DNA of 64,000 nucleotides from Octopus sinensis (lineage: Eukaryota). The number at the start of each line of letters is the position of its first letter. The stretch's first letter is position 1. This document shows positions 3,892 through 43,900 of this stretch, piece after piece. The stretch lies in the NCBI RefSeq assembly GCF_006345805.1, contig NC_043000.1, positions 8,432,001 through 8,496,000 of the forward strand, given 5' to 3'. The position numbers and the translations under genes were made by a program. The notes under the pieces were generated by a model, which was not told where the DNA came from, searched no databases, and saw only the letters and a list, made by a program, of their open reading frames with translations.

Positions 3892-3973
3892 GTCAAAATC
3901 ATCAACAAGAAGGAGAAATACGATGCAGTACAAAGTAGGGTTGGTTCAAAGGATAACATCACTCACAGACCAG
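3892..3973 (+). CDS. tau: tau exon A (82 nt, phase 0-1), repeat VKIINKKEKYDAVQSRVGSKDNITHRP(G)
   Basis: Acceptor ttttaacttctag at 3879-3891, donor CAG|GTATGA at 3974; RVGS and HRPG motifs. Confidence 0.93.
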
Positions 3974-6900
3974 GTATGATATATATATGTACATACTTAA
4001 TGATGTATATATACATACACTTATATTATTATTATCATTATTTCATATACATGCAGCAGATTAAATTGTTGGAAAAGAAGAATTCCTAACATCAGGTTAC
4101 AACAAGTAACCTTAGATGCCAAAAACCTTCCTAAGTGTCCTAGCTGTCCCTAATAACACTATTTTCTGGAGCTGCACTAAACTAGGTTTTGTGTCTATTT
4201 TCTCTATCCATTTGTTCAAATCTTTAGGGATAGTTCCTAATGCACCTATACAGGTGCAATGTTATCATCATCATCGTTATTATTTTTAAGGTGGTAAGGT
4301 GGCAGAATCATTAGCATGCCTGGCAAAATGCTTAGCAGCATTTTGTCTGTCTTTATATTCTGAGTTCAAATTCTATCAATGTCAGTTTTGACTTCCATCC
4401 TTTCAAGGGTAATAAAACAAGTACCAGTTATGCACTGAGGTCAATGTAATTGACTTACCTCTCCCAGAAGTTCCAGGCCTTAATCATATATACTTATGCA
4501 TGTATAAAAACATGGTACAGAAATCTGATTTCTTAATTGAAATATTAAATATACAGTTCACATATAAAACTTCCTAGACATATTAAGAATAAATATGCAA
4601 ATATTAACACATAAAGAATGATGGGCTACAATTGTAGCCATGAAGCAGAGGTCGACCAGCCACGATTATAGCCCAGATTGATGCATTTAACTTATGGGCG
4701 TTTGTTAGGGTCTAATGTCACTCAAACACTCTGACACCCCACCAGAATGCAAGAGGGCTGATAGTTCAACTAATGACTTTTCAGACGATGTAAAACTTGT
4801 CACCATTATATACTAAGAAAATATTTAAACTATTTTTGTTATGTGTGTATGGTAGTCTCATTTTCATTAAATGTGCTCAGCAGTCCATGCTATGTGAGTG
4901 CAAATCCCAGCACTTTATCAGTTGACACATATAAGCACCAATCAGCAAACAACTTGTTTGCTGAAATTATAAATAAAGCCTGTGCCTTTGTGTCGGCTCA
5001 GAATTCCAGCAACTTCTGGCTGATGAGATGCAACATGTCTAAACGATAGTGTCTCAGAATGCTGTGTAGCAATGAGCCAAGTGAGTTGAATACGTTGTTG
5101 TCATAAAATGAATGAGTTATTCTTCTATGGCATACACTACAGCGACCAGCATATTTTACATCTGAACTTGCCTTCATTTATTAACAATGAATATGCAAAC
5201 ATTTATTTTAGATTTTGCTGTGCATGATGTAAATAACAATTTTTTCATAGTTGGCAGATATAATTCATTTGCTGAAAGTATAAACAAAGCCACCAGCTTG
5301 GTTTGAGCTCAAAGGTCCGGGTACTTCTAGCTGGAAAGACACAGAATGTCACATCACTAGTGTCCCAGAATCCTGTGTGGAAACAAGCCAAGTGTGTTTT
5401 GACATTCATCATAAAAGAGAGAAGTTATTCTCCTATGATGGTGACCAGCATATTTTGTGTCTGAAACCTGCTGAAATATATTAAGAATAAATGCACAAAT
5501 ATTAATCCCAGATCTCACCATACATGGTGCAAATAATGATTTTGTTTATCATCTAGCAGATATAAGCACCAATCAGCTAACAACAAAAATTATGCTTAGT
5601 GACATTTTGTTGAGCTCTTCTGAGTTCAAATCCTGCCAAGGTTATATTATCCTTTCATCCATTTGGGACTGAACAGATAAAGTTGACTGGGGTCAATGTA
5701 ACCAACTTGATCCCTCCCCTCAAAATTGATGGCCTAAAACCCTGCAATGGACTAGCATCCCATTAAAGAAGGGCTGTTGTGATCAAAATCACTTATAGGC
5801 TATAGAAATCAGGGATAAAAAAAAAAATGTATAACAAATGTTTAACAAATATTTATTTATTGTAACTTTAATTTCTTAATCTTTTGAACTACTGCTCCTC
5901 TTTAGAGCAGTTTTTCCTCCATCTCTACTTTGTGTAGAAATTTTATGGGACATTTTTAAAAAATAGAAATTGGCAACCAAAATGTTTTTCTAAATATATG
6001 TCTCTGTCATGCAAGTAGTGTCCTTCATTTCCATTTTACTGTGAAACATATCTGGCCAATGGGAAATATTGCCTTGTTTAGAAGCAAGTGAGGATTGGTG
6101 ACAGGAAAGACATCTGGCCACAGAAAATCTGCCTTAACAAAATTCCATCTGGCCCTTGGAAAAGTGGATGTTAAAATGATGATTTTTTGAAAGATGTAAA
6201 ATTAGTTAACTGATATCAAGAAATGTATTTTCTTTTTTTTTTATATTTTGTACTAATTTTATAAAATTCTTTTATATTGTGCTAACTTTATTCAATTCTT
6301 TATCATATGTATTTAAATTACAGGTGGTGGAAATATAAGAATTGAAAACAAACGATTGTCTTATCTGGAAAGTGCTAAACCAAAGGTGGGCTCCTTGGAT
6401 AAAGTTGACCATAAACCTGGTGGTGGAGATAAAAAGGTTAGCTTTACACTACATTTGCATTACAGTTTTTTTTTATTTCTTTGTATTCTCCATCAATACA
6501 GATATTTCTATTTCAGCTATTTAACTATGGCCTGTTGTCATTATGAACTGCATTAACGTTTTGGTGAAAACTAAAATTAAATTATATATTACATCAAAAC
6601 TCTAGCTTTGATTTCAGATTTAGGCAGCCGTAAACAAGCAAAAAATATTAGTTATCATTATAGATTTTTTAATTTCATTTAGAAAATGGTATTGGCACTA
6701 TGAAGTAAGGTTCTATAATTGAAAAAAAAAAAAAAAAAAAAAAAAAAGGAGCTGGTTTGTTTTCCAAAAGACAGCACTGAATTGTTGACTGTAATTCCTA
6801 TTTTACAGCAGGTAATTATTAACTAATTGTTCTGAGCATTATAATTTACTAATTAATTTGTTAATAATTTGATTTAGAAGCTGTGTCATTTAGTTGGCTC

Positions 6901-11926: not shown

Positions 11927-14900
11927 AACATATTTATGGATATCATTGTTTTATTTTATTACGTTGACCAGATCTTAGATGATAAACTGGAATGGACTGT
12001 TCAACCTAAAGTGGGTTCGAAGATCAATATTACCCACAAACCTGGTGGTGGAGATAAAAAGGTAAGATTCAGTTGATTTACTCTGTTGCATCTCTTTTAT
12101 TTTGGCGCTATTCTTGATAAATAATTCCTTGCTTTCACAATACTATTAATCCTAAATTGCTTCAGTTCCGTATGTTACATATACTGAAAAAATGGAAACA
12201 TACATCTAGCGCTGCTGAGAATATGATTCAAAATTTAATAAAATATACTGAATTTATTAGAATCTTAAGGTTGTGATTGAAGTTATACAAATATAATAAT
12301 AGTAATTTTTCTTTTATCTTTTATTATTTTCTATTATTTACTTGTTTCAGTCATTATACTGTGGCTATGTTGAGACACCATCTTGAAGAGTTTGGTCAAA
12401 CAAATCAACTCTATCTTTTATTTCTAAGTCTAATTACTTATTTTATCTGTCTTTTTTGCCGAACTGTTAAGTTATGAGAATATAGTCAAACCTATAGTAG
12501 TTGTGGAGCAGTAGTGGGAAACAAACACAAAGACACACATACATATGTATGTATATACAAACACACACACACACACACAAACAAGCATTGGGCTTCTGCA
12601 CATTTTCCATGTATTAAATTCACCTACAAAGCATTGGAAGACTCACTCACCCAAAGTGCCACATAGTTGGAATGAATCTAAAACCAAGCAAGGTTGTTCA
12701 CCTCACAGCCATGTGTGTTGTTTTCTTTTCTTACTTTTAGGTACAGGCATGGCTATGTGGTAAGACGGTTGCTTCCCAACTACATGGTTCTGGGTTCATC
12801 CCACTGCTTGGCACCTTAGGCTAATATCTGCCACTATAGCTTCGGCTGACCAAAGCCTTGCGAGTGGATTTGGTAGACAGAAACTGAAAGAAGGCGGAAA
12901 CATTAGAACGCTGGGCGAAATGCTTAGTGGTATTTCATCTGTCTTTACGTTCTGAGTTCAAATTCCGCGGAGGTCGACTTTGCCTTTCATCCTTTAGGGG
13001 TCGATAAATTAAGTACCAGTTACGCACTGGGGTCGATGTAATCAACTTAATCTGTTTGTCTGTCCTTGTTTGTCCCCTCTATGTTTAGCCCCTTGTGGGC
13101 AATAAAGAAATAAGAAACTGAAAGAAGCTCATTGTATCTATTATTTGTGTGTGTTTGTCCCCTACTGCTGTTTGTTGACTAGTGCTGGTGTGTTTATGTC
13201 CCTGTAACTTAGCAGTTCAGCAAAAGAGTCTGATGGAATAAATACCAGGCTTTAAAAAAGAAATTATAAGTACTAGGGTTGATCCATTTGACTAAATATT
13301 CTTCAAGGCAATGCCCCAGCATGGTCACCACTGAATGACTGAAATGAGTAAAAGATAAAAGATTCTTTTAACTCTTTAGCATTCAGATAATTCTGTTAAA
13401 CGTAAAGCTTATTCATTCACATTATTTTTTAATTATCTTGTAGCTTGAAGACTTTGACGATGTAGTAGTTTATTTTTAGAATGACACTGTAGGGTAGATG
13501 TGAGGGGCCAATCTGGCCAGTCTGAACACAAAGCAAGTAGACTGGTCTAAATGCTAAAGAGTTAAATGAGTGGAAACGTTGAGAGCTTTTATGCCAAACA
13601 TTATATTGCTAATAATAATGATTGTTTTCTTTAACACCAGCAGCTACAAATTGGGGCTTTTCTAATATATTTTGCAGTGTTTCGCTATTAGCAGTGTGGT
13701 TTTTTTTTTTTTTTTTTTAATTTTGACTTCGACAAAAGCAACAATACTAAAAATGTATGATTGGATTAATTAATCTTTGTTTTAATTCAGGACAAAAATT
13801 CAAGATTAATTTGCTTATATAAATTCACATTTTATTCGGAAAGAAATTTGTTTGTGATTAGATATTTTTTTTCTTTTTACAATTAGTTAAATTTTAACTA
13901 ATATCTTATAAGCAAATATTTTTGTCATAAAACTTAGATTTTGCACTAATTATGTTGCCCCATAAAAATTTGTAGATAGTTTAATAAAATAACATCTTGT
14001 CTGAATTATATATTTTATTTTCTCAAATTCAAACCATTTAGTGATGCTCAGTAAACTCAAAGAAAGGAAAAAAAACCAAAAAAACAGTTATTTTTTTTTT
14101 CTTACTTGCATCTTCATAATTAGGCATATTCTGTAATTTACCTCCCTAATTCAGGTATTGGATGAGAAAGTAGAGTGGAATGTTCAGCCAAAAGTTGGCT
14201 CCAAGGATAATATTACTCACAAACCAGGTGGTGGGGATAAGAAGGTGAGTAGGTTAGAACCAGCTTGACTTTGAACTTCCATTTGTTTCTCAAGAGTCAG
14301 CATACCTTTTTTGGACTGCAAAAAATGTTCCAAATGTGTATATGTATGTAATTATGCATTTATGTATGTACATATATGTATGTGTGTGCATGTGTGTGTA
14401 ACTGCAAAAGAAAACACCTCAATCTGTCAAGAGTTACCACTAGCTTTGTAACTGCTTGTTTGATATTTCTCTGGACAATTGCTTTGGATTCAACCACAAT
14501 TGATCCGATATCATTGTAGCTTGTCTTGTTGCAAATGCATATGCAAACAGAACTAATTGTTTTGTTTTAAATGAAAAGAAAATGAAACAAACCCTACATT
14601 TTGTGAAAAGGCAAGTAGTAAGTAATCTTAAAGATATTAAAAGAGTCATTAATATTTGCTACTGGCTTCATATTCTGAGGTGAATGGAATGATTAATGAA
14701 TTCACTAAATGGTTCCTACTTACATGGAGTAATATAGTTTTTTTCTTCTATAAAATAGGAAACTAATTTTCTTTTTATTTGTGTATAAAATTCTGGCATG
14801 TGATTTTGTTTTTGATCTTGAATTAATGTTGTTTTTGTTGTGTTGGTGCAATGATAATCTTTTTTTCCTATGGTTTTCTGCATTATGCAGTTTTACTGTA

Positions 14901-17900
14901 ATTTACCTGGAGTAGAAACAGAAACTCTGGGAAACATTTTATATCAGATATACTACTGATATATACTTCTCAAATTGCACCTGGTGTTGTTTTTAACTTG
15001 TTTTCAAAGTAGGTGGACATAAAAAGTATCGATGAATTAAACACATTGAACAGATTCTGTACATATTGAAGTGCCTCCCAATGAATAATGAAGAAATCGG
15101 TGCATTGTATTACATGAACCGATTTCTTCAGAAATTTTCATTATTCAAATATCAAAACATTTTCATTTCACTTCTTGCGACATCTTCAATGAGTTAAGCA
15201 TATTCTTTAATTTACCTCCCTAACTCAGGTAATGGATGAGAAAGTAGAGTGGATTGCTCAGCCAAAAGTTGGCTCCAAGGATAATATTACTCACAAACCA
15301 GGTGGTGGGGATAAGAAGGTGAGTAGGTTAGAACCAGCTTGACTTTGAACTTCCATCTGTTTCTCAAGAGTCAGCATACCTTTTTTGGACTGCAAAAATT
15401 TCCCAAATGCATCTCTTCTGATAAATGTATTTGTATTATATATACATATTTATTTATTTATAAATATATGTAATCACAAAATAAAATACATTGATTTATC
15501 AAGTGTCAGCATGAAAGTTTTGCAACTCTGCTTATTTGATATTTCTTTGGACAGTTGCTTTGGTTCTGGCCCAATGATTTAATATCATTGTGGGTTGCAA
15601 TGGTGCAGTTGCATATACATTTAGAACAGATAAAACAAAATGGTAAAAAAAAACATGCCCTGCATTTTGAATAACAAATAAGTAATAAGTGGTCTTGAAG
15701 ACTTTTGCATTTTCGTCAGTAAATCTTCATAAGTTCAAGGAAACATTAGCATTTTCGATTGGGTTTTACATTCTGAAGTGAATCAAATTAATGAATTCAC
15801 GAAGAGTTCAAAGCCAAAATGGTACATACTTACTTGTAATGATATAAATATTTCTTCTGTAAAATGTGAAATTATTTTCTTAATATTCCTTATATTTGAT
15901 TGCAAAATATTATGTTGCATGCAATTTTGAATTAATGTTGTATTTGTTGATTGTGTTAGTGCAATGATACCTTTCTTTTTTGTGTGTGTGTGTGTCTGTG
16001 ATTTTCTGTGTAATGCAAGTTTTATTGTAATTTACCTGCATTAGTAACAGAAACTCTTGTAATCATGTCAAATATAGTATTAATGTAATCTTTGTGAATT
16101 GTACCTAGAGTGTTAGAGTGTTGTTTATTTTTTATATATATGTCATTTATTCTAGAATAGTTGGACAAAGTAAAAAAGATATGTGAAATAAAGCAATTAA
16201 CAGATTCTGTTGTGCACTGAAGTATTATCAAAGATAACACATGCACTTATTCACTATATTTTATTATTAGATTTTCAGAACATGTTCATCACCCTTTCTG
16301 TAATCTTTTCAATAATCTATGTTGCGACTAATTCCAACAACAAAGAAATCAGTGTGTGTGTTACTTTGTCAGCATTCCAATGTGCTGTGGAATCTATTCA
16401 TTGTTTACTTTGTTTCAACATACAGAGCCGTAGAAATACATCCAAATGAATGCAATATTTATATTCATGTTGCTGTTGTTTGACTATCTTTAGCTACTTT
16501 TATAGCTATAAATATGCTCCCTTTACTCTCATTTGAGTTCTAAGCCGTCAGTTAGGCAGTATTTTATATTGAAATATCCTAAAGCTGCTATATCTTGTTT
16601 GCGTTGGATTGGAAAACTGTCAGATGCCTGTTCCAGTTCTTTGTGTTCTGACAGAAATGCTTGCAACAACACTGGTGCCAAGCTGTATCAGCCCAATTTG
16701 GCAACTTTTCCCTCGGATAAACATCAAAGGTATAGAGTGGTGGGGAGGATACAGTACATACATGTACCAAGGTATGGTAACTGTTGACTGATGGTAGTCC
16801 TCTGAGTGCACTTACATTTAAGATTTCAGCACAGTCCATAGATATCAATTATTCTAGTGTTATAATTTTATATTTCATAGTTGATCTACTGTTAAGGTCT
16901 TATATCTACTTTTTGATATGTTATCATGTAAATTTTTTTTAATTTTAATTTTAGTTCTGTTGATGCTAACTTTTTTATATTTCTTATATTTAGTACCTTA
17001 TTAAAATTCATAGAATTCAAAATTTATTTTTGACAAAATCAGATATCCATTAAATCTATATTATACCAAATTTAGAAACATTTGAAGAATTACTATCATT
17101 TACTACTAAAATATATATAATTTTAGCATAATTCGGTATAATTGTCCTTGATATTTATTTTTATAATTCTTAATTGATTTTATGTTACACTGTGAATTTG
17201 GAGAAATAGTTTACATATAATTTTTACTTAACTCTTAAGGTCCTACAGTGCTTTCGCTATATAAATATCCTGTTAGAAGTTTTGATGAAATACAGCCAGC
17301 CCAATATAATAGTCATAAAAATATAACTATTGCATGAATTTGAATGGCATAGGATTATAGGATATGATGATTGTTAGTGTATATTGTAAACGTGATTTTT
17401 ACTTGTTGTCATGCCTTTTCACTTGCCCAGGTAGGATGAATATGGGTAGCTGATTAAACATAGGTGTTTTTTCACATATATTTACAAGATATTTCCTTAG
17501 TATCGATTTCCAGTCTCAGAGCTGAATTTGTGAGCCAGTTGTCTCTGTGACTTGGAAACTGCACAAATCCCTCCCTGATACCTTCATCTCTTCCATTGAT
17601 GGACCGACAGTGGTGTTGCCCTGGCGACTGGCAAAGATTGTGGTCTCATCATTCATTCTGTTAGATGTTTATTCAGGAAAAACCAAAGTTAAAGAAAATA
17701 CTTGATGTTCTAAATTCAAAGATTTTGAAGGACCAACATTACACCTGCAATGACTAATTCTGAGATCACTTACTCCTACTCAGAATCAGTAAATCCCAAT
17801 ATCACTTAGATTAATGGTGTGTAGAGATGACTCTGAAAGATCACTGATTATCTCCTCTGAATCCAAGCTTTCTTTCTCTAAATCCTTAATGAATAATAAC

Positions 17901-20569
17901 AAATAAGTCATTATTGAATAATATCACCTAATTCTAAGTCACTGACTCAGGTATTAATTGCCATAATGTTTTGTCAGACATTCACTCTGTTTACTGCAAA
18001 AAATAATAATAAATAAATAAATGTCTGTAGTGCAAACTGGAAGATTTTTAATAAGATATTTCTAAAATCTGGTGATATGTCCAAGAAGGTAACTAGAAGG
18101 GAGTACGGAGACAGGACAATTGACCGGGATGGGCACGTTTGCAAGCATGTGAAGGGAGATCAAAAGATGGAGGTAAGCATGGAGTGGAAGTAGTGAATGG
18201 TGCACAGGGCTATAAGAATTGATGGTAAACATTCATTGGGGAAGCAATAAAAATGATGAACTGATGTCAGTTGATGTAACTGAGAGGAAAGGAGAGGGTG
18301 AGTGGCAGTATAGAAATGGTTTGTGGTAACGTTCTGGTTTCATTACTTACTGCATCAGAATAATACAGAAGAAAAAAGAGTGATGCAAGGATCAAGTGCT
18401 AAAGAGATGCGGGATTGGGCTAAAGATTGCATTTGTAGGGATAAAAAAGGGGTGGGCAATGGTAAAAAAAAATTTTCTAAAATATGGGTGGGGGACTAGA
18501 AAGATACATTGCATATATGCTAGTCTTTTCTTTTAATTGCTTTGTAAACTCTATGGTTACCTATGATGCTTAATCAAAATTTATATTGTGCCTTCATGAA
18601 AATATTGCTAAAATTAGTTTGAAATTGATGTTGAAACCTACAGTATCTCTTGAACAAATGAAAAACGTATTTAAACACAGCACTTGCTGTAAGTTGGAAA
18701 GAGATCTTGTGAAAAATGTAAAGCTTTGAGAAAGATATTTAAAAATTCCATAAAATCAATGAAATTCAGAATTCAACTTAACTGTTTTCTCCTCTCACTG
18801 TCATATATGTAACTGGCAAAAATTTACACACACACACACACACATGTATATACACCAATATTTTTCTGTATATAAAAATGGCAATCATAGGTAAACAACT
18901 ATCACTTAGAGTTAAGATTCAGAATTAGAAATAAAAATTTCGATGCTGTCCGTTTATAAAATAAAGTGTATATATGTATGTGTGCATATATATATCTGTA
19001 TGTATGTATGTATGTATGTATGTTTGTATGTATACATACATACATAGATACATACATACATACATAGATACATACATACATACATACATACATAAATACA
19101 TACATACATATATACATACATACATACATGTATGTATGTGTATATATGTGTGTGTGTGTGCATACATGTATATCTATGTGTGTATTTATGTATTTATAGA
19201 TATATATTTATATTCCTAAATATATGTATGTTCATGTGTGTATCACATGATATGTGATCAACCAGATTATCAGCTGTTATACATCACTAGTCACAATGCA
19301 CTTTGCATCGTTCTAGCTTTCGAATGATGCCATCTCACTGAGTAGGCAAGCAGGCTATGTATATATATATATATTTATATATCCATGCACACATACAAAC
19401 ACTCATATCATGTATATATGTCTTACAATCTTGTTTTAGAAGTTTTTTAAACTGAATTTCCCTCTAAAACTATATACTTCAAAACGAAAATATATAAGAA
19501 ATGGAATCCCAAAACTATTAATTCCTATATGATGTTACACCTATAATTGATATGCACTCTTCTCTATCTTCTCTATTTACTAATATTGGTTCTTGCAGAA
19601 AACCTATTATTTATTTGTTCTTGCGGTGCTGTTGATGTTGTATTGCACTTCTATTGACTGTTTTTCTTTCACATCTCTAATCTTATTCTTCTTTTGGGAA
19701 ACTGGCCTTTCTACTTTCCTTCTTTTTAACATTTTTTTTTAATTAACTGTAAATTTCGTACCAATTATAATCTTATTAACTTACAGAAAACTCATAAAAG
19801 CTTAAATATTTTTGCTTTCTTCTTTTTTTTCTTCCACCTGGAATTTAATTTCATTTCATTGTCTTTTATTCCAAAATATCGTTTGATGATCTCTGAAAAT
19901 TATTAACTTTTCATTTAACTTGTTGTAAATAACATAGATTGAAGACCAGAAATTAGAATGGAAAGCTGGATCCAAAGTAGGATCTAAAGACAACCTGAAA
20001 CATGTACCTGGCGGTGGAGAAATTAAGGTAAGCAAAATTCCCTGAAATAATGGAAGAGTCTAAAAATGATTTTTTTATTAGTATTCATTTGTTTAATCAT
20101 CTTTGTTTCAGTTATGACATCAATGTTATGTGTATTGTTGTTGTTGTTGTTATTATTGTTATTATTATTGTTATTAAGGCAGCAAGCTGGCAGAATTGCT
20201 AGAACATCAGGTTAAATGTTTAGTAGCATTTTGTCTGTCTATATGTTCTGAATTCAAATTCACCCAAAGTTGACTTTGCCTTCCATCCTTTCAGGAGCAA
20301 TTAAATATGTACCAGTTTAGTACTGGTGTTGATATAATCCACAACTATCCCCTCCCACCCACCAAAAAAAAAAAAAATTCAGGCCTTGTTCTAATTGTAG
20401 AAACAATTAATTGAAGGCAGTGAGCTGGCAGAATCATCACTGCCCCACACAAATTGGTTAGCAGCACTTCTTTTGGTTCTATATTCCTAGTTCAAATTCC
20501 ACTAAGGGTCAATGTAATTGACTAATTCCCTCTCACAATATTTCAGGCCTTGTGCCTGTTATGGAAAAG

Positions 20570-20650: not shown

Positions 20651-22841
20651 TAACATACTGGCTAAATCATTAGAACATTGCAGAAAATGCTTAGCAGTAT
20701 TTATTCTGGTCTTTTACATTCTGAGTTCAGTACACACCGATGTCAACTGTGCCTTTCATCCTTTCAAGGTTGATAAAATATTCTATATCAGTCAAGTATT
20801 GGGGGTGGGTGGGTCTGTGATAATGATTGACTAAAACTACTATTATTATCATTATTATTTTGATACTTTAGGATATCTATGTTTTGTACTAATGGTGTTT
20901 ATTTTCTTCATAGTTATAAGCTATTGCTATTTTTCATTTTTTTTTTTTTTGTTGGAGGTGGGATGGCAGATAATTTATTTACAGAGTAATTCCAGACCAT
21001 ATCAATTTTTGCTTTTTATTCAATAGCCCAAGAAAATAAAAGAATCAGACCCGCTCGAGTCGTTTAAACATACAAATTTAATTTATCTCATATTTTATTG
21101 CTACTAATTCCTGTTTTGATGTATTGCTTGTAATTCACGTTTTACAGATTTGATTTGTTATAGCTAACTAAAATTAACAAATAATCTATTTTTGAAAAGC
21201 CAAATAAATGAATTTAGTAAAATGTATTTATTCACAAAAAGAACTTCTTTCCTCACAAAGATTCCATTTAGACAGTTTCTGTTTCCTTTCCCATTTTCTT
21301 TTTAATGCTCAAGTGTCTACTGTTCTATGCTGGCATTCCTTAATAGTGCTACATTTTTATTTTAATCTATTAGAATCAATAGATTGGGCACGTTTTCTAA
21401 AATGTCTATCTTCTTTTTAAGTTTTTAACAGCACTCAATTAGATTTCTGTTCCCAATTTTATTTTGAATTGGCGGAATCTTTGTATTAGCATGAGGTGTG
21501 TGGTATCTTTATATTAATTTTTAAATAGTTTCACTTGCTGTTTATACTTCAGCTCATGGAAATGGTGTTGTTTTATATTTTGTTGTAAGTTAGATATGTC
21601 TATTTTGAAATTTTCCTCTCCTGGGTTGTGTTTATTATGGGATTTCTAATTTAGTTCATTTGATGCCTTTCTTCATTTCCCCCTTTTTTTTTTGTTTAAA
21701 TTAAATATATAGTACAATTTGCCTAATATGAAATTTCTTCCAATATTTTTTTTAATAATTTTTCCTTTATATTACTAAGAACAGTTAAGTTTATAAAATG
21801 AGTTCTGTAACTCTTTCAAGAAATTTTACTATTTTACATTAGTAATACAACACATAACTGGAGTTTACTTTGGTTTCATTAAAAGAAAGGAGAAACAAGT
21901 TGTCATTTATTGTTCTTTGTTAATCTTTGAGAATGATTTATGAATTTGTTTATTCTTCAGAATAATTTGTTATTCTTTAGAGTGACTGTAGACCCATTAG
22001 AACTGTCCCCCAACACCTATTTTGTATTTCTATTCAGTTTCATGTTTTGAAATGGAACTAGGAAAATATCCTCTTGTCTCTCAAATTATTTTATAGTTGG
22101 TTGGTAGCCACAATGAAACTATTCTGGTAGGAATTTTCTTTGAGGAATTTCATATTATTTTCATTTCAATAAATGTCCATTGTTACTTTGGTTATCTTGA
22201 CAAATCGAACATGTACTCACAAGTGAAAACTACTTAAGGATCAAATATTATTATATAATGTACTAAAACTGCTGAGTTCTATTTCCAGTGAAAATAAGTC
22301 TATTTATTTATTGATTTTTATACTGAGGAAACATCCTTTGAAGCTGTCAGTTATCTGTTAATAAAAACTGTTGGTTCTCTACAGATTCCATCGCAAAACG
22401 TTCTTGGAAAGGAAGTTGACTCAAACGTTGGTTGTATTAGTGACGAAGACCACCAAGCTGTTGGTGGTATTGCATCATCTCCTCCTCCTCCTTCTTCTTC
22501 ACTACCACAGGTAACATTGGCTTTGGTCTGGCTGCCCTCCTCCTCCATTTCAATAAAAAAAGTGAAAATTAGTGTAATGGCTATTGATTCACCTCTTAGT
22601 GAAATTAATTGCTACTCCACTTGGAACCTTTTCACAGATTATGAAAACTGACCCCGCCGATTTTAAAAAAAATCAAGGAATTTTACACTCCGTATTTATT
22701 AGCTTTTGATATGCATGGCTTCCTTTAGTTTTATATATTTGTAAACACCTGGCAAAAATACAAAGAAACACATTTGCTGTTTCTTTTTTTTTTCCAATTG
22801 ATTTACACTATTGCTTTGTTTTACACACACACATGTATATG

Positions 22842-40835: not shown

Positions 40836-40976
40836 CATTATCATTGTTATTATTATTATTATTACTATTCTCATGCATTAATTGAATGTCTCCTTGTTTT
40901 GTAGGTTGAAAGCCAGGTACTAAAATTCAAAGAAAATGCAGAACCTCGAACAAACACTGGTATTAACAAGTCGTAG
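3892..40976 (+). CDS. tau: Tau/MAP2/MAP4-family microtubule-associated protein, 3' partial multi-exon gene model (8 exons in window; 5' end upstream of the window)
   Basis: Spliced translation: VKIINKKEKYDAVQSRVGSKDNITHRPG/GGNIRIENKRLSYLESAKPKVGSLDKVDHKPGGGDKK/ILDDKLEWTVQPKVGSKINITHKPGGGDKK/VLDEKVEWNVQPKVGSKDNITHKPGGGDKK/VMDEKVEWIAQPKVGSKDNITHKPGGGDKK/IEDQKLEWKAGSKVGSKDNLKHVPGGGEIK/IPSQNVLGKEVDSNVGCISDEDHQAVGGIASSPPPPSSSLPQ/VESQVLKFKENAEPRTNTGINKS*. All introns are GT-AG with compatible phases. KxGS and PGGG are the tubulin-binding repeat signature. Probably the single invertebrate co-orthologue of MAPT/MAP2/MAP4. Confidence 0.93.
6324..6436 (+). CDS. tau: tau exon B (113 nt, phase 1-0), GGGNIRIENKRLSYLESAKPKVGSLDKVDHKPGGGDKK
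   Basis: Acceptor aaattacag at 6315-6323, donor AAG|GTTAGC at 6437; completes the PGGG split from exon A and holds a full KVGS...HKPGGG repeat. Confidence 0.95.
7977..8313. mobile_element. Spacer-less palindromic (foldback/MITE-like) element, 140-bp arms, with an extra 57-bp direct duplication in the left arm
   Basis: aattgcagcgtggaagg...ccttccacgctgcaatt; symmetry centre in CTGCAG at 8173/8174; duplicated units start 8058 and 8115. Confidence 0.85.
9921..10220. mobile_element. Foldback MITE-like element, ~130-bp imperfect arms and 37-bp spacer
   Basis: ttcttatttgaactcgtgtccattg vs caatggacacgagttcaaataagaa; cttcagcaacactttctgtc vs gacagaaagtgttgctgaag. Confidence 0.8.
11972..12061 (+). CDS. 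tau: tau exon C (90 nt, phase 0-0), ILDDKLEWTVQPKVGSKINITHKPGGGDKK
   Basis: Acceptor ttgaccag ending 11971, donor AAG|GTAAGA at 12062; KVGS/HKPGGG repeat. Confidence 0.93.
12305..12715 (-). mobile_element. Diverged family-B SINE, inverted relative to the adjacent 12740 copy
   Basis: Reverse-orientation landmarks ttttacttgtttcagtcatt, ttttgccgaactgttaagtta, cccaaagtgccaca, cacagccatg. Confidence 0.7.
12740..13362 (+). mobile_element. tRNA-derived SINE (family B) hosting the family-A insertion
   Basis: Head ggcatggctatgtggtaag...ggttctgggttca, core gcaccttaggc...gatttggtagacagaaactg, tail gactgaaatgagtaaaagataaaa. Confidence 0.82.
12893..13112 (+). mobile_element. tRNA-derived SINE (family A) nested in a family-B SINE, 14-bp TSD
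   Basis: Box-B-like ttctgagttcaaattcc; core gtcgactttgcctttcatccttt.ggggtcgataaattaagtacc; TSD agaaactgaaagaa at 12879-12892 and 13113-13126. Confidence 0.88.
13372..13561. mobile_element. piggyBac-type MITE, 190 bp
   Basis: TTAA on both sides (13368-13371, 13562-13565); TIR CTCTTTAGCATTCAGA / TCTAAATGCTAAAGAG (15/16). Confidence 0.8.
14155..14244 (+). CDS. tau: tau exon D (90 nt, phase 0-0), VLDEKVEWNVQPKVGSKDNITHKPGGGDKK
   Basis: Acceptor cctccctaattcag ending 14154, donor AAG|GTGAGT at 14245. Confidence 0.92.
15229..15318 (+). CDS. tau: tau exon E (90 nt, phase 0-0), VMDEKVEWIAQPKVGSKDNITHKPGGGDKK; tandem duplicate of exon D
   Basis: Acceptor cctccctaactcag ending 15228, donor AAG|GTGAGT at 15319; 87/90 nt identical to exon D. 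Confidence 0.9.
18965..19165. repeat. (TATG)n/(TACA)n compound microsatellite, representative of dozens of (AT)n, (CA)n and (ATT)n tracts in the window
   Basis: Direct reading; other large tracts at ~1455, 7918, 8372, 9545, 10911, 20570, 46375, 50800, 53200, 55560, 59160. Confidence 0.95.
19938..20027 (+). CDS. tau: tau exon F (90 nt, phase 0-0), IEDQKLEWKAGSKVGSKDNLKHVPGGGEIK
   Basis: Acceptor aacatag ending 19937, donor AAG|GTAAGC at 20028; KVGS...HVPGGG. Confidence 0.93.
20177..20835 (+). mobile_element. Three head-to-tail family-A SINEs separated by (ATT)n
   Basis: Repeated ggcag..agctggcagaat / ttctga(a/g)ttcaaatt / ttcatcctttc landmarks at ~20177, ~20415, ~20660. Confidence 0.75.
22385..22510 (+). 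CDS. tau: tau exon G (126 nt, phase 0-0), degenerate repeat plus Pro/Ser linker IPSQNVLGKEVDSNVGCISDEDHQAVGGIASSPPPPSSSLPQ
   Basis: Acceptor ggttctctacag ending 22384, donor CAG|GTAACA at 22511; open in frame; S-x-V-G...H...GG spacing matches the other repeats. Confidence 0.7.
27075..27797 (-). mobile_element. Degenerate Tc1/mariner transposon, probably DD37D (maT)-type
   Basis: ORF 27106-27552 contains YVWQQD..CHTS..KWL....FWPPNSPSCNPMYYY (consensus WPPNSPDxNPxDY); CAGGGTG-type terminus at 27791-27797; other end not seen. Confidence 0.85.
28870..30580 (-). mobile_element. Degenerate RTE-clade LINE, reverse transcriptase region
   Basis: Minus-strand remnants FVDFEKPYD (~29890), GLQQGCIVSP (~29715), ADDIVLLGSSEGDTQHVL...AGMKIS (~29550-29645), interrupted by stops and frameshifts; boundaries approximate. 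Confidence 0.8.
31498..31525 (+). CDS. Candidate 28-nt microexon of tau (KSLTRYEGK + G)
   Basis: Long pyrimidine tract ~31428-31470, CTAAC at 31471-31475, TGC at 31484-31486, ttttccag acceptor ending 31497, donor AAG|GTAGGC at 31526. No protein homology support. Confidence 0.35.
32595..32756. mobile_element. mariner-like MITE end; related copy at ~40165-40307
   Basis: Shared terminus actagtc...tttttgatgccac(t/c)ttg followed by TA. Confidence 0.45.
33465..34420 (+). mobile_element. RTE-clade LINE 3' fragment (RT C-terminus plus 3'UTR with GAT tail)
   Basis: + strand reads AWAKFRELL...RLYDTYVRTAMLHGNETW...GHVLHMDEDS...RPRKTWDEVVKHDL; 3'UTR ends cattaaacgatggtgatgat. Confidence 0.85.
35323..35703 (-). 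mobile_element. Non-autonomous Helitron (381 bp), different internal sequence
   Basis: a|CTAGcattatcgcccagcattgctcggg ... tttatacatataaaGA|t: same terminal structure and AT target. Confidence 0.8.
36240..36386. mobile_element. hAT (Charlie-like) MITE, 147 bp
   Basis: Perfect 14-bp TIR CAGTGGTTCCCAAC/GTTGGGAACCACTG; 8-bp TSD ttctaaat/tactaaat (7/8). Confidence 0.85.
37318..38040 (+). mobile_element. Three head-to-tail family-A SINEs separated by (ATT)n
   Basis: ttctgagttcaaatt at ~37375, ~37602, ~37892; each ends aaatttgaaacc or agaaagg followed by (ATT)n. Confidence 0.8.
38215..38446. repeat. Compound (ATT)n/(CTT)n microsatellite with an 81-bp higher-order duplication
   Basis: atcattcttcttcttcttatt...ttttatt recurs at 38268 and 38349. 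Confidence 0.9.
39245..39540 (-). mobile_element. tRNA-derived SINE of a third family; related copies at ~19250-19355 and 56126-56330(+)
   Basis: Reverse tRNA-like head gggaatcaaaaccacgatcc...cctagccactggg; shared accaggctatcagatgttgctacacatcgctagtcacaatgcac end. Confidence 0.65.
39561..39696. repeat. 136-bp near-perfect palindrome centred on (TA)13
   Basis: ttttagcctcagtttagagcattt...aattaactataagg (TA)13 ccttatagttaatt...aaatgctctaaactgaagctaaaa. Confidence 0.9.
40598..40790 (+). mobile_element. Family-A SINE just upstream of terminal exon H; further + copies at ~4290-4480, 5592-5735, 7477-7680, 9062-9180, 39795-39978, 51670-51885, 51960-52165
   Basis: Same box-B and gcctttcatcctttcg.ggtcgataaattaagtacc core. 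Confidence 0.82.
40905..40976 (+). CDS. tau: tau terminal coding exon H, R' pseudo-repeat VESQVLKFKENAEPRTNTGINKS*
   Basis: Acceptor tccttgttttgtag ending 40904; aligns to human tau IETHKLTFRENAKAKTDHG (E, L, F, ENA, T, G identical); TAG at 40974-40976. Confidence 0.9.
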   Translation, partial: VESQVLKFKENAEPRTNTGINKS

Positions 40977-43900
40977 CCGTAAATGCAACTTTTATTCCAG
41001 TTTTTTTTTCTTAATTTTTCCCCCCCAGAGTTGGCTCAGTCTGTCTTCTCTGTATTTCAGACTGTTAAAAATAGCTCATCCAACCCAACAAATATACATA
41101 CATATATACATATATATACATACATATATCTATAGATATATATAGATATATAGATATATATATATATATATAGATATATATACATTTATATACATATATA
41201 TATATATATATAAATATATATTTATACACATATATAGATAAGTATATATATATATATATACATTCACATACATTTACATATATCTGCACGTACACTCACA
41301 CAAACATTTACATAAATGGGGGGGAAAAATGAAAAATGTGAAGAAGACTATGAAAAATTTTTCTTTTTCTTTTTAAATTTTTCTTTTTTTAAGTTTCTTT
41401 TCTGAACAATTATTGCGACTCCCCTCCCCCCACTATGTTTTAATTCATACAATCACACCCAAGCATTGTTGATTTGATGTTATACTAGTAAAGAAAACGA
41501 TAACAAGCAGTCGATATTAGTAAAATTTTCAGTTCTTCACTAGACCAAAAATAAAAAAAAAATATGAAAAAAAAAAGGAAAAAAACGAAAGAAAATTGAA
41601 AAAAAAATAGCACAATTCTTTTAAAGTTTAAAAACTTCACAAAAAAATAGCATAAAAAGAAAAGAAGAAAAATATAAAGAAAAGCAAATTGTTCTCCCCG
41701 GACACCTTATTATTGTTTACAAAACCTACAAAATACAAACAAACCTTATGGTGGTACTGTATAACAGCCTTTGTGATATTGTACTCTATGGCAAACATCA
41801 ATCTCACAACTGCAGCAGAGAAGGAGACGAAAAGAATTGCATTTCTGAAGATGGATCTTGAAGACTCTCTAGAAGCAGGTTGAGTATGTCTTATTGTAAT
41901 AAATGGGAACAGTAAGATGGTTATTGCATTCACATTTTCTAAGAACTAAATTGTGAACACTCCACACGAAATAGTTCAAGAACAGTATGACTATGTTTGT
42001 TTAATTAATTATTTGATTTTTTTTTAATGTTATTTTTTCCTTCTCATTCTTCTACTTCTTCTATTTCTTCAATATTGCTCTTTGATAGTTTTCTTCCCCC
42101 TTTGCTCCATACATTCTCATTCTCTGTTCCTTCTTCAATAGAATACTGAGTATTAATCTTGACCCTTATGTACATATATGTGTGTTTGTGTTTGTGTGTG
42201 TGTATGTGTGTCTGTGAATATATGTATATATATATATATATATATAATATATATTTATACACATATATAGATAAGTATATATATATATATACATTCACAT
42301 ACATTTACATATATCTGCACGTACACTCACACAAACATTTACATAAATGGGGGGGAAAAATGAAAAATGTGAAGAAGACTATGAAAAATTTTTCTTTTTC
42401 TTTTTAATTTTTCTTTTTTTAAGTTTCTTTTCTGAACAATTATTGCGACTCCCCTCCCCCCACTATGTTTTAATTCATACAATCACACCCAAGCATTGTT
42501 GATTTGATGTTATACTAGTAAAGAAAACGATAACAAGCAGTCGATATTAGTAAAATTTTCAGTTCTTCACTAGACCAAAAATAAAAAAAAAATATGAAAA
42601 AAAAAAGGAAAAAAACGAAAGAAAATTGAAAAAAAAATAGCACAATTCTTTTAAAGTTTAAAAACTTCACAAAAAAATAGCATAAAAAGAAAAGAAGAAA
42701 AATATAAAGAAAAGCAAATTGTTCTCCCCGGACACCTTATTATTGTTTACAAAACCTACAAAATACAAACAAACCTTATGGTGGTACTGTATAACAGCCT
42801 TTGTGATATTGTACTCTATGGCAAACATCAATCTCACAACTGCAGCAGAGAAGGAGACGAAAAGAATTGCATTTCTGAAGATGGATCTTGAAGACTCTCT
42901 AGAAGCAGGTTGAGTATGTCTTATTGTAATAAATGGGAACAGTAAGATGGTTATTGCATTCACATTTTCTAAGAACTAAATTGTGAACACTCCACACGAA
43001 ATAGTTCAAGAACAGTATGACTATGTTTGTTTAATTAATTATTTGATTTTTTTTTTAATGTTATTTTTTCCTTCTCATTCTTCTACTTCTTCTATTTCTT
43101 CAATATTGCTCTTTGATAGTTTTCTTCCCCCTTTGCTCCATACATTCTCATTCTCTGTTCCTTCTTCAATAGAATACTGAGTATTAATCTTGACCCTTAT
43201 GTACATATATGTGTGTTTGTGTTTGTGTGTGTGTATGTGTGTCTGTGAATATATGTATATATATATATTATATATATATATATATATATATTTACATATA
43301 GAAAATTCATGTATCTACATTGTATACATAGCTGTATATTTATATAAAATACATATATCTGTATTTTGTATGCGTGTGTATAAAAGTTTGAGCACATACA
43401 CACACACAAAACACACATACTTGTGTGCATTTGTATATATATTGTGCATATGTATATAGTAAATATACATATAATACATATATAGAATAATATATTTATA
43501 GTTTATAAACATATATAATAATATATATGTATGTATATATATATATATATATATATATACTATACATACAGAGCTCCGGGTGGTTGTTACTTTATTACAT
43601 TCACATAAGATTTACCATAGCTGGAATAACCTTACACCATGAATTAAAATATTTATGTATAGAGAGTTAATTAAATTAACAACTATCCTTATGCAGCACA
43701 CGCACACATATACTAACAAACATACACATAAAGAAAAATTCATGCACAAAACCAGCTGATATGACAACGCATATCAATACATCAGTTACTACTATTAAAT
43801 AGCTTGTTTATATGAATTAAAGCTGTGTGGCTGGATGTTATAAGTTTACATTTCTAAACTACATTTCATTTTGCTTGTCGCTCTTTTAATTCTAATTTCC

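What the first reader, a model, noticed from the sequence alone, without database searches (positions are those of the whole stretch)
14100..16210. Repeat-number gain caught in the act: exons D and E lie in a ~1.07-kb tandem duplication and differ only by amino-acid-changing substitutions
Seen: exon D plus flanking intron is duplicated at offset 1,074 bp, with collinear intron homology for about 800 bp downstream. The exons differ at 3 of 90 nt (TTG/ATG L-M, AAT/ATT N-I, GTT/GCT V-A). All three are non-synonymous, none synonymous, and all fall in the inter-repeat segment before QPKVGS. Both keep intact AG/GT sites. Inference: this shows the mechanism (intronic tandem duplication) that made the array, with possible early functional divergence. 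Three changes are too few for a selection test alone.
Basis: partly seen in the sequence, partly recalled or inferred. Interest (0 to 1): 0.72.

Follow-up and report, generated by a model that had tools for sequence, protein, structure and literature searches.

The report
Old exon pair homogenised by gene conversion
Two neighbouring 90-base exons of an octopus tau/MAP-type microtubule-binding gene really are tandem duplicates, but the duplication is old (the paper nautilus Argonauta has it too) and the exons look freshly copied only because gene conversion keeps overwriting one with the other.

Summary
Exons D (14155-14244) and E (15229-15318) are 90-nt, phase-0 exons 1,074 bp apart with AG/GT sites. 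They differ at 3 nt, all non-synonymous, and lie in a head-to-tail duplication of about 1.07-1.15 kb.

The "caught in the act" reading is not correct. The gene is an octopod tau/MAP2/MAP4-family gene (Pfam PF00418). The same D/E pair is present, unchanged, in Octopus vulgaris and also in Argonauta hians. The intron around E and the 3' end of the D-E intron are orthologous between the two genera.

Within the window, the two units' introns differ by about 25% plus many indels, but a ~205-bp exon-centred core differs at only 6 sites. In that core, 19 sites show paralogues agreeing within a species while the species differ, and none shows the orthologue pattern. Five of the 8 such exon sites are synonymous. 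So a duplication older than the Octopus-Argonauta split (fossil minimum ~29 Ma) is kept looking young by gene conversion.

Three of three changes being non-synonymous is expected about half the time by chance. Their clustering marks the edge of the converted tract.

D and E are under purifying selection (pN/pS ~0.27). The O. vulgaris model skips them and the Argonauta model includes them, so they are probably cassette exons. This is a known mechanism and a clean example.

The parts
3892..3973 (+). Repeat exon A (VKIINKKEKYDAVQSRVGSKDNITHRPG-). It ends with the first base of a Gly codon.
   Evidence: tblastn and sequence. Identical to residues of O. vulgaris P0278.
6324..6436 (+). Repeat exon B (-GGGNIRIENKRLSYLESAKPKVGSLDKVDHKPGGGDKK)
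   Evidence: matches P0278
11972..12061 (+). Repeat exon C, 90 nt, phase 0 (ILDDKLEWTVQPKVGSKINITHKPGGGDKK). It is an older paralogue of D/E and shares only the exon plus about 40 nt upstream with them.
   Evidence: 72-74% over 118-138 nt; pS against D = 0.74
14081..15153 (+). Tandem duplication unit 1 (exon D plus its downstream intron)
   Evidence: gapped alignment
14120..14324 (+). Homogenised (gene-converted) core of unit 1: 35 nt of upstream intron, exon D and 80 nt of downstream intron. 6 mismatches to the E core, with only 1 in 14184-14319.
   Evidence: P of 6 or fewer mismatches at intron divergence = 2e-18
14155..14244 (+). Exon D, one tau-type repeat (VLDEKVEWNVQPKVGSKDNITHKPGGGDKK)
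15154..16300 (+). Tandem duplication unit 2 (exon E plus its downstream intron). The 3' end is approximate.
15194..15398 (+). Homogenised core of unit 2
15229..15318 (+). Exon E, one tau-type repeat (VMDEKVEWIAQPKVGSKDNITHKPGGGDKK)
15089..15153 (+). The 3' part of the D-E intron just upstream of the unit-2 start. It is homologous to the same position upstream of Argonauta exon E but not to anything upstream of D, so the duplication junction is shared.
   Evidence: z = 4.0; 2 of 300 shuffles reach the score; all D-by-E comparisons at chance
19938..20027 (+). Repeat exon F (IEDQKLEWKAGSKVGSKDNLKHVPGGGEIK)
   Evidence: matches P0278
22385..22510 (+). Exon G (IPSQNVLGKEVDSNVGCISDEDHQAVGGIASSPPPPSSSLPQ)
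40905..40976 (+). Terminal coding exon H (VESQVLKFKENAEPRTNTGINKS, then a stop), equivalent to the segment after tau's repeats

Best explanation
The window carries the repeat region of an octopod tau/MAP2/MAP4-family gene. Each microtubule-binding repeat is encoded by its own 90-nt, phase-0 exon.

Exons D and E arose when one exon and about 1 kb of its intron were duplicated in tandem. This happened before the Octopus and Argonauta lineages split. Since then the introns have drifted apart. A short exon-centred tract has been repeatedly homogenised by non-reciprocal recombination (gene conversion) between the two copies, independently in each lineage. The tract is about 205 bp in Octopus and about 155 bp in Argonauta.

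In Octopus the most recently converted stretch begins at about 14184 and runs 75 nt into the intron. The KVGS...PGGG tubulin-contact half of the repeat is therefore identical in D and E, and the three surviving differences all sit in the inter-repeat linker 5' of that stretch.

Shown: the duplication, its age relative to the Argonauta split, the concerted pattern, and purifying selection on the coding sequence.

Inferred: D and E are cassette exons whose inclusion adds one or two repeats and so tunes microtubule affinity, as exon 10 does in human tau.
For: Family: five PF00418 repeats, E = 2e-64. The best solved-structure match is tau R2x4 on microtubules, 6CVN, E = 4e-44. The closest proteins are Argonauta hians GAB1598187.1 and O. 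vulgaris P0278.

Age: intron mismatch between the units is 25% plus indels. D and E are identical in O. vulgaris, whose locus is 98.4-98.7% identical to the window. Argonauta has D and E 1,875 bp apart.

Orthology outside the core: the intron downstream of Octopus E aligns collinearly to that of Argonauta E (688 columns, 219 bits), against 312 columns and 128 bits for the Octopus D-E intron. In the proximal intron, p(D,E) = 0.33 exceeds p(Octopus E, Argonauta E) = 0.24. The branch asymmetry is 89 against 37, P = 4e-6. Four-sequence sites outside the core give 17 orthologue-pattern sites against 6 for the third topology, P = 0.017. The sequence upstream of the unit-2 boundary is shared only by the two E copies, z = 4.0.

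Conversion: in the core there are 19 within-species-paralogue sites and none of either other pattern, P = 4e-6. Eight of these are in the exon and five are synonymous: GAG/GAA, CCA/CCT, AAG/AAA, AAT/AAC and the third base of codon 10. The 80-nt downstream flank that is 98-99% identical between Octopus D and E is only about 64% conserved between genera, and only 78% or less identical between Argonauta D and E beyond +30. It is therefore not simply constrained.

Coding function: all six copies in three assemblies keep 90 nt, an open frame and AG/GT. pN/pS between Octopus and Argonauta is 0.22-0.32, P = 0.002.

Cassette hint: the O. vulgaris model joins C directly to F, while the Argonauta model includes D and E. 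Synonymous divergence in D is lower than in C plus F, P = 0.011. Isoform lengths in Lingula and Clavelina relatives step by 30-31 aa.
Against: Over the whole intron, the Octopus D-E distance (0.30) is smaller than the Octopus E to Argonauta E distance (0.39). Under a strict clock this would put the duplication after the split. I attribute it to poor distal alignment, a long Argonauta branch, or older and wider homogenisation, but that is an assumption.

The intron downstream of Argonauta D is mostly microsatellite, so D-to-D orthology downstream could not be tested.

Only two lineages were available.

No RNA data exist here. The longest O. vulgaris product on record lacks both D and E, so their inclusion in Octopus transcripts is unproven.

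D and E are not independent data points in the pN/pS test.
Confidence: 0.78

Rival explanations
1. Independent duplications. The common ancestor had one exon, Octopus and Argonauta each duplicated it separately (units of 1.07 kb and 1.88 kb), and the core is kept similar by conversion and/or constraint within each lineage.
For: The unit lengths differ (1,074 against 1,875 bp). The whole-intron distance between Octopus D and E (0.30) is less than that between Octopus E and Argonauta E (0.39). In the noisy distal four-way alignment the within-species pattern leads: 38 P, 22 O, 10 X. Recurrent duplication in this gene is shown by the Argonauta five-copy array.
Against: The sequence at the 3' end of the D-E intron, beyond the unit boundary, is shared by the E copies of the two genera and by no other pair. 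The asymmetry of 89 against 37, P = 4e-6, is not expected for two neutral sister introns. Proximal intron distances and four-sequence sites favour D/D and E/E orthology. An indel in the -75 to -36 region groups D with D and E with E. The length difference is explained by microsatellite insertions in Argonauta.
Confidence: 0.12
2. One reading: a very recent duplication, with three early amino-acid changes as incipient functional divergence.
For: Exon identity is 87/90 with no synonymous change. The flanks are 97% identical over 205 nt.
Against: The rest of the unit is only 66-79% identical with many indels. The chance of 6 or fewer differences in the core at the intron rate is 2e-18. The same pair with the same three differences is in O. 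vulgaris, and a pair exists in Argonauta. Three of three being non-synonymous has P = 0.50.
Confidence: 0.02
3. An old duplication with no conversion. The core is similar only because the exon and its splice-regulatory flanks are under very strong purifying selection.
For: The upstream 35 nt and the first ~30 nt of the downstream intron are conserved in all four copies (27 of 35 sites invariant). Synonymous divergence in D/E is reduced, as is usual for alternative exons.
Against: Selection preserves ancestral states. It does not make both paralogues of one species share 19 derived differences from both paralogues of the other, including 5 synonymous and 11 intronic sites, with no conflicting site. 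Intron positions +31 to +80 are near-identical between Octopus D and E but diverged in Argonauta and between the genera.
Confidence: 0.04
4. D and E are decaying or unused pseudo-exons in Octopus, and the gene normally splices C to F.
For: The longest O. vulgaris product on record (P0278, 752 aa) lacks both exons.
Against: All six copies keep their length, frame and consensus AG / AAG|GTGAGT sites. pN/pS is 0.27 between genera whose introns have diverged by 24-39%. The Argonauta model includes both.
Confidence: 0.05

Closest known systems
Human MAPT exon 10 (repeat R2; 3R/4R tau) and the alternatively spliced repeat exons of MAP2 and MAP4
   Same: One repeat of the KxGS...PGGG type is encoded by one symmetric exon, and including or skipping it changes the repeat number. 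The octopus repeats align to tau R2 (6CVN, 7PQC) and match PF00418. Knowledge of 3R/4R splicing comes from the literature (e.g. PMC9735940) and was not tested here.
   Different: Here two adjacent, near-identical copies exist and evolve in concert. The exons are 90 nt (30 aa). Alternative splicing is only inferred, from one model that skips them and one that includes them.
Tandem duplication of MTBD2 in Notothenia coriiceps MAPT (7 repeats; PMC4815063)
   Same: A lineage-specific gain of repeats by tandem duplication of one repeat exon within the tau/MAP family.
   Different: That case is described at the protein and transcript level. No intron-based dating and no concerted evolution were reported.
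Concerted evolution of tandem duplicates by gene conversion (review PMC3966226; duplicated Dscam exons, PMC3236188)
   Same: Paralogues within a genome are more alike than orthologues between species inside a bounded tract, while flanking sequence keeps the orthologous history.
   Different: The tract here is exon-sized (~150-200 bp) within a single gene. Dscam exon arrays are mutually exclusive and mostly diverge, whereas D and E can both be included without breaking the frame.
Argonauta hians MAP4-like protein GAB1598187.1 (P0123) and O. vulgaris 'titin-like' protein (P0278)
   Same: They are orthologues. P0278 is identical to window exons A, B, C, F, G and H. P0123 has the same exon order, including a D/E pair.
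   Different: P0278 omits D and E. Argonauta D and E carry their own shared substitutions, and the gene has an extra five-copy exon array that is absent from Octopus.

Membership tests
Tau/MAP2/MAP4 family (Pfam PF00418 tubulin-binding repeat) | Several tandem 30-32-aa repeats with the KxGS...PGGG signature that score above the Pfam gathering threshold | tested here: met
   Five stretches, 213 bits against a cut-off of 27, E = 2e-64. Tau chains in the PDB match at E = 4e-44.
Tau/MAP2/MAP4 family (Pfam PF00418 tubulin-binding repeat) | Repeats lie in the C-terminal part, after a basic Ser/Pro/Lys-rich region, and are followed by a KL.F.E.A...-type segment | tested here: met
   O. vulgaris P0278 and Argonauta P0123 show this architecture. 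Exon H (VESQVLKFKENAEPR) is at 40905.
Tau/MAP2/MAP4 family (Pfam PF00418 tubulin-binding repeat) | Binds and stabilises microtubules | not testable with these tools
   Needs biochemistry.
Tandem exon duplication | Adjacent exons of the same length and phase with homologous sequence, and collinear homology of the accompanying intron | tested here: met
   90 nt each, phase 0-0. The units at 14081-15153 and 15154 to about 16300 align end to end.
Recent ('caught in the act') duplication | Uniformly high identity across the whole unit, and the second copy absent from close relatives | tested here: not met
   Intron identity is 66-79%. The pair is present in O. vulgaris and Argonauta.
Concerted evolution by gene conversion | Within a bounded tract, paralogues of one species share derived states not found in the other species' paralogues, and flanking sequence follows orthology | tested here: met
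   Core: 19 within-species sites, 0 orthologue sites, 0 for the third topology. Outside the core: 17 orthologue-pattern sites against 6 for the third topology. The junction is shared.
Concerted evolution by gene conversion | Shared states include selectively silent positions (synonymous or intronic) | tested here: met
   5 synonymous exon sites and 11 intronic sites.
Cassette (skipped or included) alternative exons | Symmetric phase and a length divisible by three, so that skipping keeps the frame | tested here: met
   90 nt, phase 0-0. C|F, C|D|F, C|E|F and C|D|E|F are all in frame.
Cassette (skipped or included) alternative exons | Transcripts with and without the exon in the same species | not testable with these tools
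   The evidence is only cross-species: the O. vulgaris model skips them and the Argonauta model includes them. No RNA data are available here.
Mutually exclusive exons (Dscam type) | Competing docking/selector RNA pairings, or a steric or frame incompatibility that prevents joint inclusion | tested here: not met
   Inverted repeats in 12062-19937 are all microsatellite. The D-E intron is 984 nt. Joint inclusion is in frame and is annotated in Argonauta.
Intronic non-coding RNA or RNA-editing duplex as the cause of flank conservation | An Rfam match or an unusually stable fold across the conserved core | tested here: not met
   Fold z-scores are -0.56 and +0.67. There is no Rfam hit in either core, and all sub-threshold hits fall on TG/TA microsatellites.

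The most novel reading that the evidence does not exclude
Conversion in this exon pair is not a passive by-product but is shaped by selection. For tens of millions of years, in two octopod families, the tubulin-contact half of two alternatively spliced tau-type repeats (KVGS...PGGG) is kept identical. The inter-repeat linker, 5' of the most recently converted stretch, is free to diversify. Codon 9 was hit independently in D (Thr to Asn) and in E (Thr to Ile). On this reading Octopus can make isoforms that differ only in linker chemistry, which would be a small combinatorial system for tuning microtubule binding in a large nervous system.
Probability: 0.25. Interest if true: 0.45.

Novelty: new member of a known kind. 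Interest (0 to 1): 0.3.

Why it matters
This is a warning for sequence-only reading. Near-identical exons with only amino-acid-changing differences suggest a new duplication under positive selection, but here they result from gene conversion acting on an old duplicate. That changes both the dating and any selection inference.

For cephalopod neurobiology, it shows that the octopod tau/MAP gene has two extra repeat exons that are conserved and probably optional, and that the current O. vulgaris gene model omits them. It also shows that repeat number in this gene is evolutionarily labile, given Argonauta's additional five-copy array.

For the tau field, it adds an invertebrate case in which repeat exons are duplicated, retained and homogenised. 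Both processes are already well known in general.

Tried and rejected
1. RNA structure or an editing-site duplex as the reason for the conserved exon and intron flank. Fold energies are no better than shuffled sequence.

2. A known ncRNA in the conserved flank. No Rfam hit falls there, and the sub-threshold hits are microsatellite-derived miRNA families.

3. Docking/selector pairing for mutually exclusive splicing. Only microsatellite inverted repeats were found.

4. The unit as a transposable or dispersed repeat. There are no other copies.

5. A minus-strand or overlapping gene. Only short AT-rich ORFs are present.

6. Finding octopus isoforms that contain D and/or E. The first word-indexed search returned only proteins under 280 aa, none cephalopod. 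The full-length Argonauta query returned only P0278. A long composite query returned only the upstream PEVK/'titin' gene of O. bimaculoides. Its neighbour gene model (659 aa, no Pfam hit on record) was uninformative and lies outside the D/E region.

7. A metagenome scan for further cephalopod copies found nothing.

8. Shared indels in a three-sequence comparison as proof of E/E orthology. I rejected this argument of my own, because with three sequences they may be changes on the D branch. I replaced it with four-sequence site patterns, the branch asymmetry and the shared-junction test.

9. A selection test on the three differences. P = 0.50, so it is not informative.


Full report
**What is in the sequence**

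The window is AT-rich eukaryotic DNA (GC about 0.31, many TA/CA microsatellites). On the + strand it carries a series of short exons, each encoding one repeat of the type ..KVGSK.NI.HKPGGG..K.
- Exon D is 14155-14244 and exon E is 15229-15318.
- Both are 90 nt, follow an AG, are followed by GTGAGT, and read in frame 0.
- They differ at three bases (TTG/ATG, AAT/ATT, GTT/GCT), all non-synonymous and all within the first 29 nt.
- A gapped alignment shows a complete head-to-tail duplication. Unit 1 is 14081-15153 and unit 2 runs from 15154 to about 16300, collinear over about 1 kb (E = 1e-96).
- The unit occurs nowhere else in the window, so it is not a dispersed repeat.

**What the gene is**

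The concatenated repeats match Pfam PF00418, the tau/MAP tubulin-binding repeat, five times (E = 2e-64). They align to human tau R2 in the microtubule-bound cryo-EM entries 6CVN and 7PQC.

An exhaustive profile search found the closest relative to be GAB1598187.1, 'microtubule-associated protein 4-like' of the octopod Argonauta hians (P0123). A further search found P0278 of Octopus vulgaris. P0278's C-terminal sequence is identical to window exons A (3892-3973), B (6324-6436), C (11972-12061), F (19938-20027), G (22385-22510) and H (40905-40976).

The window is 98.4-98.7% identical to the O. vulgaris locus L002. It therefore comes from O. vulgaris or a very close sister species.

**Why the duplication is not recent**

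Identity between the two units is very uneven.
- A 205-bp core (14120-14324 against 15194-15398: 35 nt of upstream intron, the exon, and 80 nt of downstream intron) has 6 mismatches. Only one of these falls in 14184-14319.
- The remaining ~850 bp is 66-79% identical with many indels.
- At the intron mismatch rate of 0.25, the chance of 6 or fewer differences in 205 nt is 2e-18, and the chance of no synonymous difference is 0.004.

O. vulgaris has both exons with exactly the same sequences. Argonauta hians also has a D/E pair, 1,875 bp apart.

**Is it the same duplication in both genera?**

With only three sequences, indels shared by the two E copies could simply be changes on the D branch, so I looked for tests that can separate one old duplication from two independent ones.
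1. Four-sequence site patterns just outside the core give 17 sites that group D with D and E with E, against 6 for the third (noise) topology (P = 0.017).
2. In a three-way alignment of Octopus D, Octopus E and Argonauta E introns, the D branch carries 89 changes and the Octopus E branch 37 (P = 4e-6). That is not expected if D and E were sister copies evolving neutrally side by side.
3. In the proximal intron (14325-14500) the paralogue distance (0.33) exceeds the E-to-E orthologue distance (0.24). The Jukes-Cantor ratio is about 1.5.
4. The 3' end of the D-E intron lies upstream of the unit-2 boundary. With the conserved -75 to -1 stretch excluded, it is significantly similar only between Octopus E and Argonauta E (z = 4.0; 2 of 300 shuffles reach the score). 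All D-by-E comparisons are at chance (also the second HSP).

A shared junction is what a single ancestral duplication predicts.

One result points the other way. Over the whole intron, the Octopus D-E distance (0.30) is smaller than the Octopus E to Argonauta E distance (0.39). I attribute this to poor distal alignment, a long Argonauta branch or older wider homogenisation, but it keeps the independent-duplication rival alive at about 0.12.

The Argonauta-Octopus split has a fossil minimum of about 29 Ma (calibration cited in PMC12682272). Molecular estimates are, to my knowledge, considerably older, but I did not verify that here.

**Why the exons still look alike**

Inside the core, 19 sites have both Octopus copies sharing one base and both Argonauta copies sharing another. 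No site groups the orthologues, and none supports the third topology (P = 4e-6).
- Eight of these sites are in the exon. Five are synonymous: GAG/GAA, CCA/CCT, AAG/AAA, AAT/AAC and the third base of codon 10.
- Eleven are intronic.

Selection on the protein cannot produce this pattern. Gene conversion (or an equivalent unequal exchange) between D and E, acting independently in each lineage, can.

Intron positions +31 to +80 are nearly identical between Octopus D and E, but diverged between Argonauta D and E (78%, then 61%) and between the genera (46 of 72 four-way sites invariant). That stretch is therefore converted rather than constrained.

The homogenised tract is about 205 bp in Octopus and about 155 bp in Argonauta, and in both it begins about 35 nt upstream of the exon. 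Those 35 nt and the first ~30 nt of the downstream intron are also conserved across genera, so some splice-site constraint is probably superimposed.

**The three differences**

With about 71 non-synonymous and 19 synonymous sites, three of three changes being non-synonymous has P = 0.50. This is no evidence of selection.

Their confinement to the first 29 nt (P = 0.033) fits the 5' edge of the latest conversion tract, near 14184.

Polarised with Argonauta and exon C:
- Met in E is derived from Leu.
- Codon 9 was ACT (Thr) and changed at the same base to AAT in D and to ATT in E.
- Val/Ala at codon 10 is ambiguous.

Aligned to tau R2, the three differences map to the inter-repeat segment (the equivalent of VQIINKKLDLSNV), and the homogenised half is the KxGS...PGGG core.

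**Are D and E used?**

All six copies in three assemblies keep their length, frame and consensus splice sites. pN/pS between Octopus and Argonauta is 0.22-0.32 (pooled 0.27, P = 0.002, with the caveat that D and E are not independent). They therefore behave as coding sequence.

The O. vulgaris model, which is the longest product on record for that gene, joins C to F and omits both exons. The Argonauta model includes both.

Several features are typical of cassette exons:
- The exons are symmetric.
- Synonymous divergence in D is lower than in the constitutive neighbours C and F (P = 0.011).
- The immediate flanks are conserved.
- Annotated isoforms of the Lingula and Clavelina relatives differ in steps of 30-31 aa.

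I therefore infer, but cannot show, that D and E are optional repeats that tune microtubule binding in the way exon 10 does in human tau.

I found no support for mutually exclusive splicing, for an RNA duplex, or for a known ncRNA in the flanks.

**Comparison with what is known**

Tandem duplication of repeat exons in this family is documented, for example the four-fold duplication of MTBD2 in Notothenia MAPT (PMC4815063). Concerted evolution of tandem duplicates by gene conversion is textbook (PMC3966226).

What is new here is the particular case: an octopod tau/MAP exon pair that has been retained since before the Argonauta split and is homogenised over an exon-sized tract. I rate it a new member of a known kind, with modest interest.

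Its main practical value is to correct an attractive but wrong reading, and to flag two conserved exons that are missing from the current O. vulgaris gene model.

**Limits**

All three word-indexed protein searches and the one representative search were used without recovering further cephalopod orthologues or isoforms. The metagenome scan was empty. The O. bimaculoides locus could be reached only at the upstream neighbour gene.

No RNA data and only two octopod lineages were available. The dating and the splicing inference are therefore the weakest parts.

Noticed in passing
window 41216-43277: A ~1,030-bp head-to-tail tandem duplication (41216-42246 and 42247-43277). Gap-free blocks are 90-100% identical. 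It lies just downstream of the last MAP exon and is single-copy in the O. vulgaris locus L002. This is a genuinely recent duplication of the same size class as the D/E unit, or else an assembly artefact.
   Followed up: partly
L001 (Argonauta hians) 60599-67184: Five tandem copies of a 96-nt phase-0 exon encoding IEDHKLEFTEKAQPKVGSKKNLIHQPGGGNVQ. All five have AG/GT sites. The period is 1,577-1,719 bp and the units, introns included, are 88-100% identical. The array is not in the annotated protein P0123 and has no counterpart in the window or in O. vulgaris. This is the truly young repeat-exon amplification in this gene.
   Followed up: partly
window 11972-12061 against 14155-14244 and 15229-15318; L001 34913, 42735, 44610: Exon C shares species-specific states with D and E at codon 17 (AAG in all three Octopus exons, AAA in all three Argonauta exons; synonymous) and at the first base of codon 20 (ATT against CTY). 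This may be a short conversion tract that also involves C.
   Followed up: no
window 14179-14181 and 15253-15255 (codon 9 of D and E): The same nucleotide of an ancestral ACT (Thr) codon changed to A in D (Asn) and to T in E (Ile). The numbers are too few to test, but it is the one hint of diversification in the linker.
   Followed up: no
L002 41-7585 (O. vulgaris, 2.4 kb upstream of the MAP gene start); L003 10001-20604 (O. bimaculoides): The neighbouring gene is a giant single ORF (2,514 aa in the locus). Its last ~1,100 residues are PEVK-like PEEKPVEAPEVKPVEA repeats, which explains the 'titin'/'titin-like' names. Whether it is a separate gene or a projection domain of the MAP gene was not resolved.
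   Followed up: partly
L002 60252-61415 against protein P0278: The deposited O. vulgaris gene model omits exons D and E even though both are intact in that genome. The annotation probably lacks one or more isoforms.
   Followed up: partly
proteins P0121 (Nucella lapillus), P0130: Other lophotrochozoan tau-like proteins also have runs of near-identical neighbouring repeats: four copies of IETQKLDFKEKASSKVGSMDNATHVP.GGEKQ in Nucella, and two to three copies of IESKKLEWKTESRVGSLDNTKHVAGGGDKK in P0130. Recent duplication or concerted evolution of repeat exons may be common in this family.
   Followed up: no
window 18955-19231 and 14334-14410: Long TG/TA-CA/TA microsatellite palindromes give many sub-threshold Rfam hits to microsatellite-derived miRNA families (mir-297, mir-466, mir-3149). 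These are composition artefacts, not genes.
   Followed up: yes
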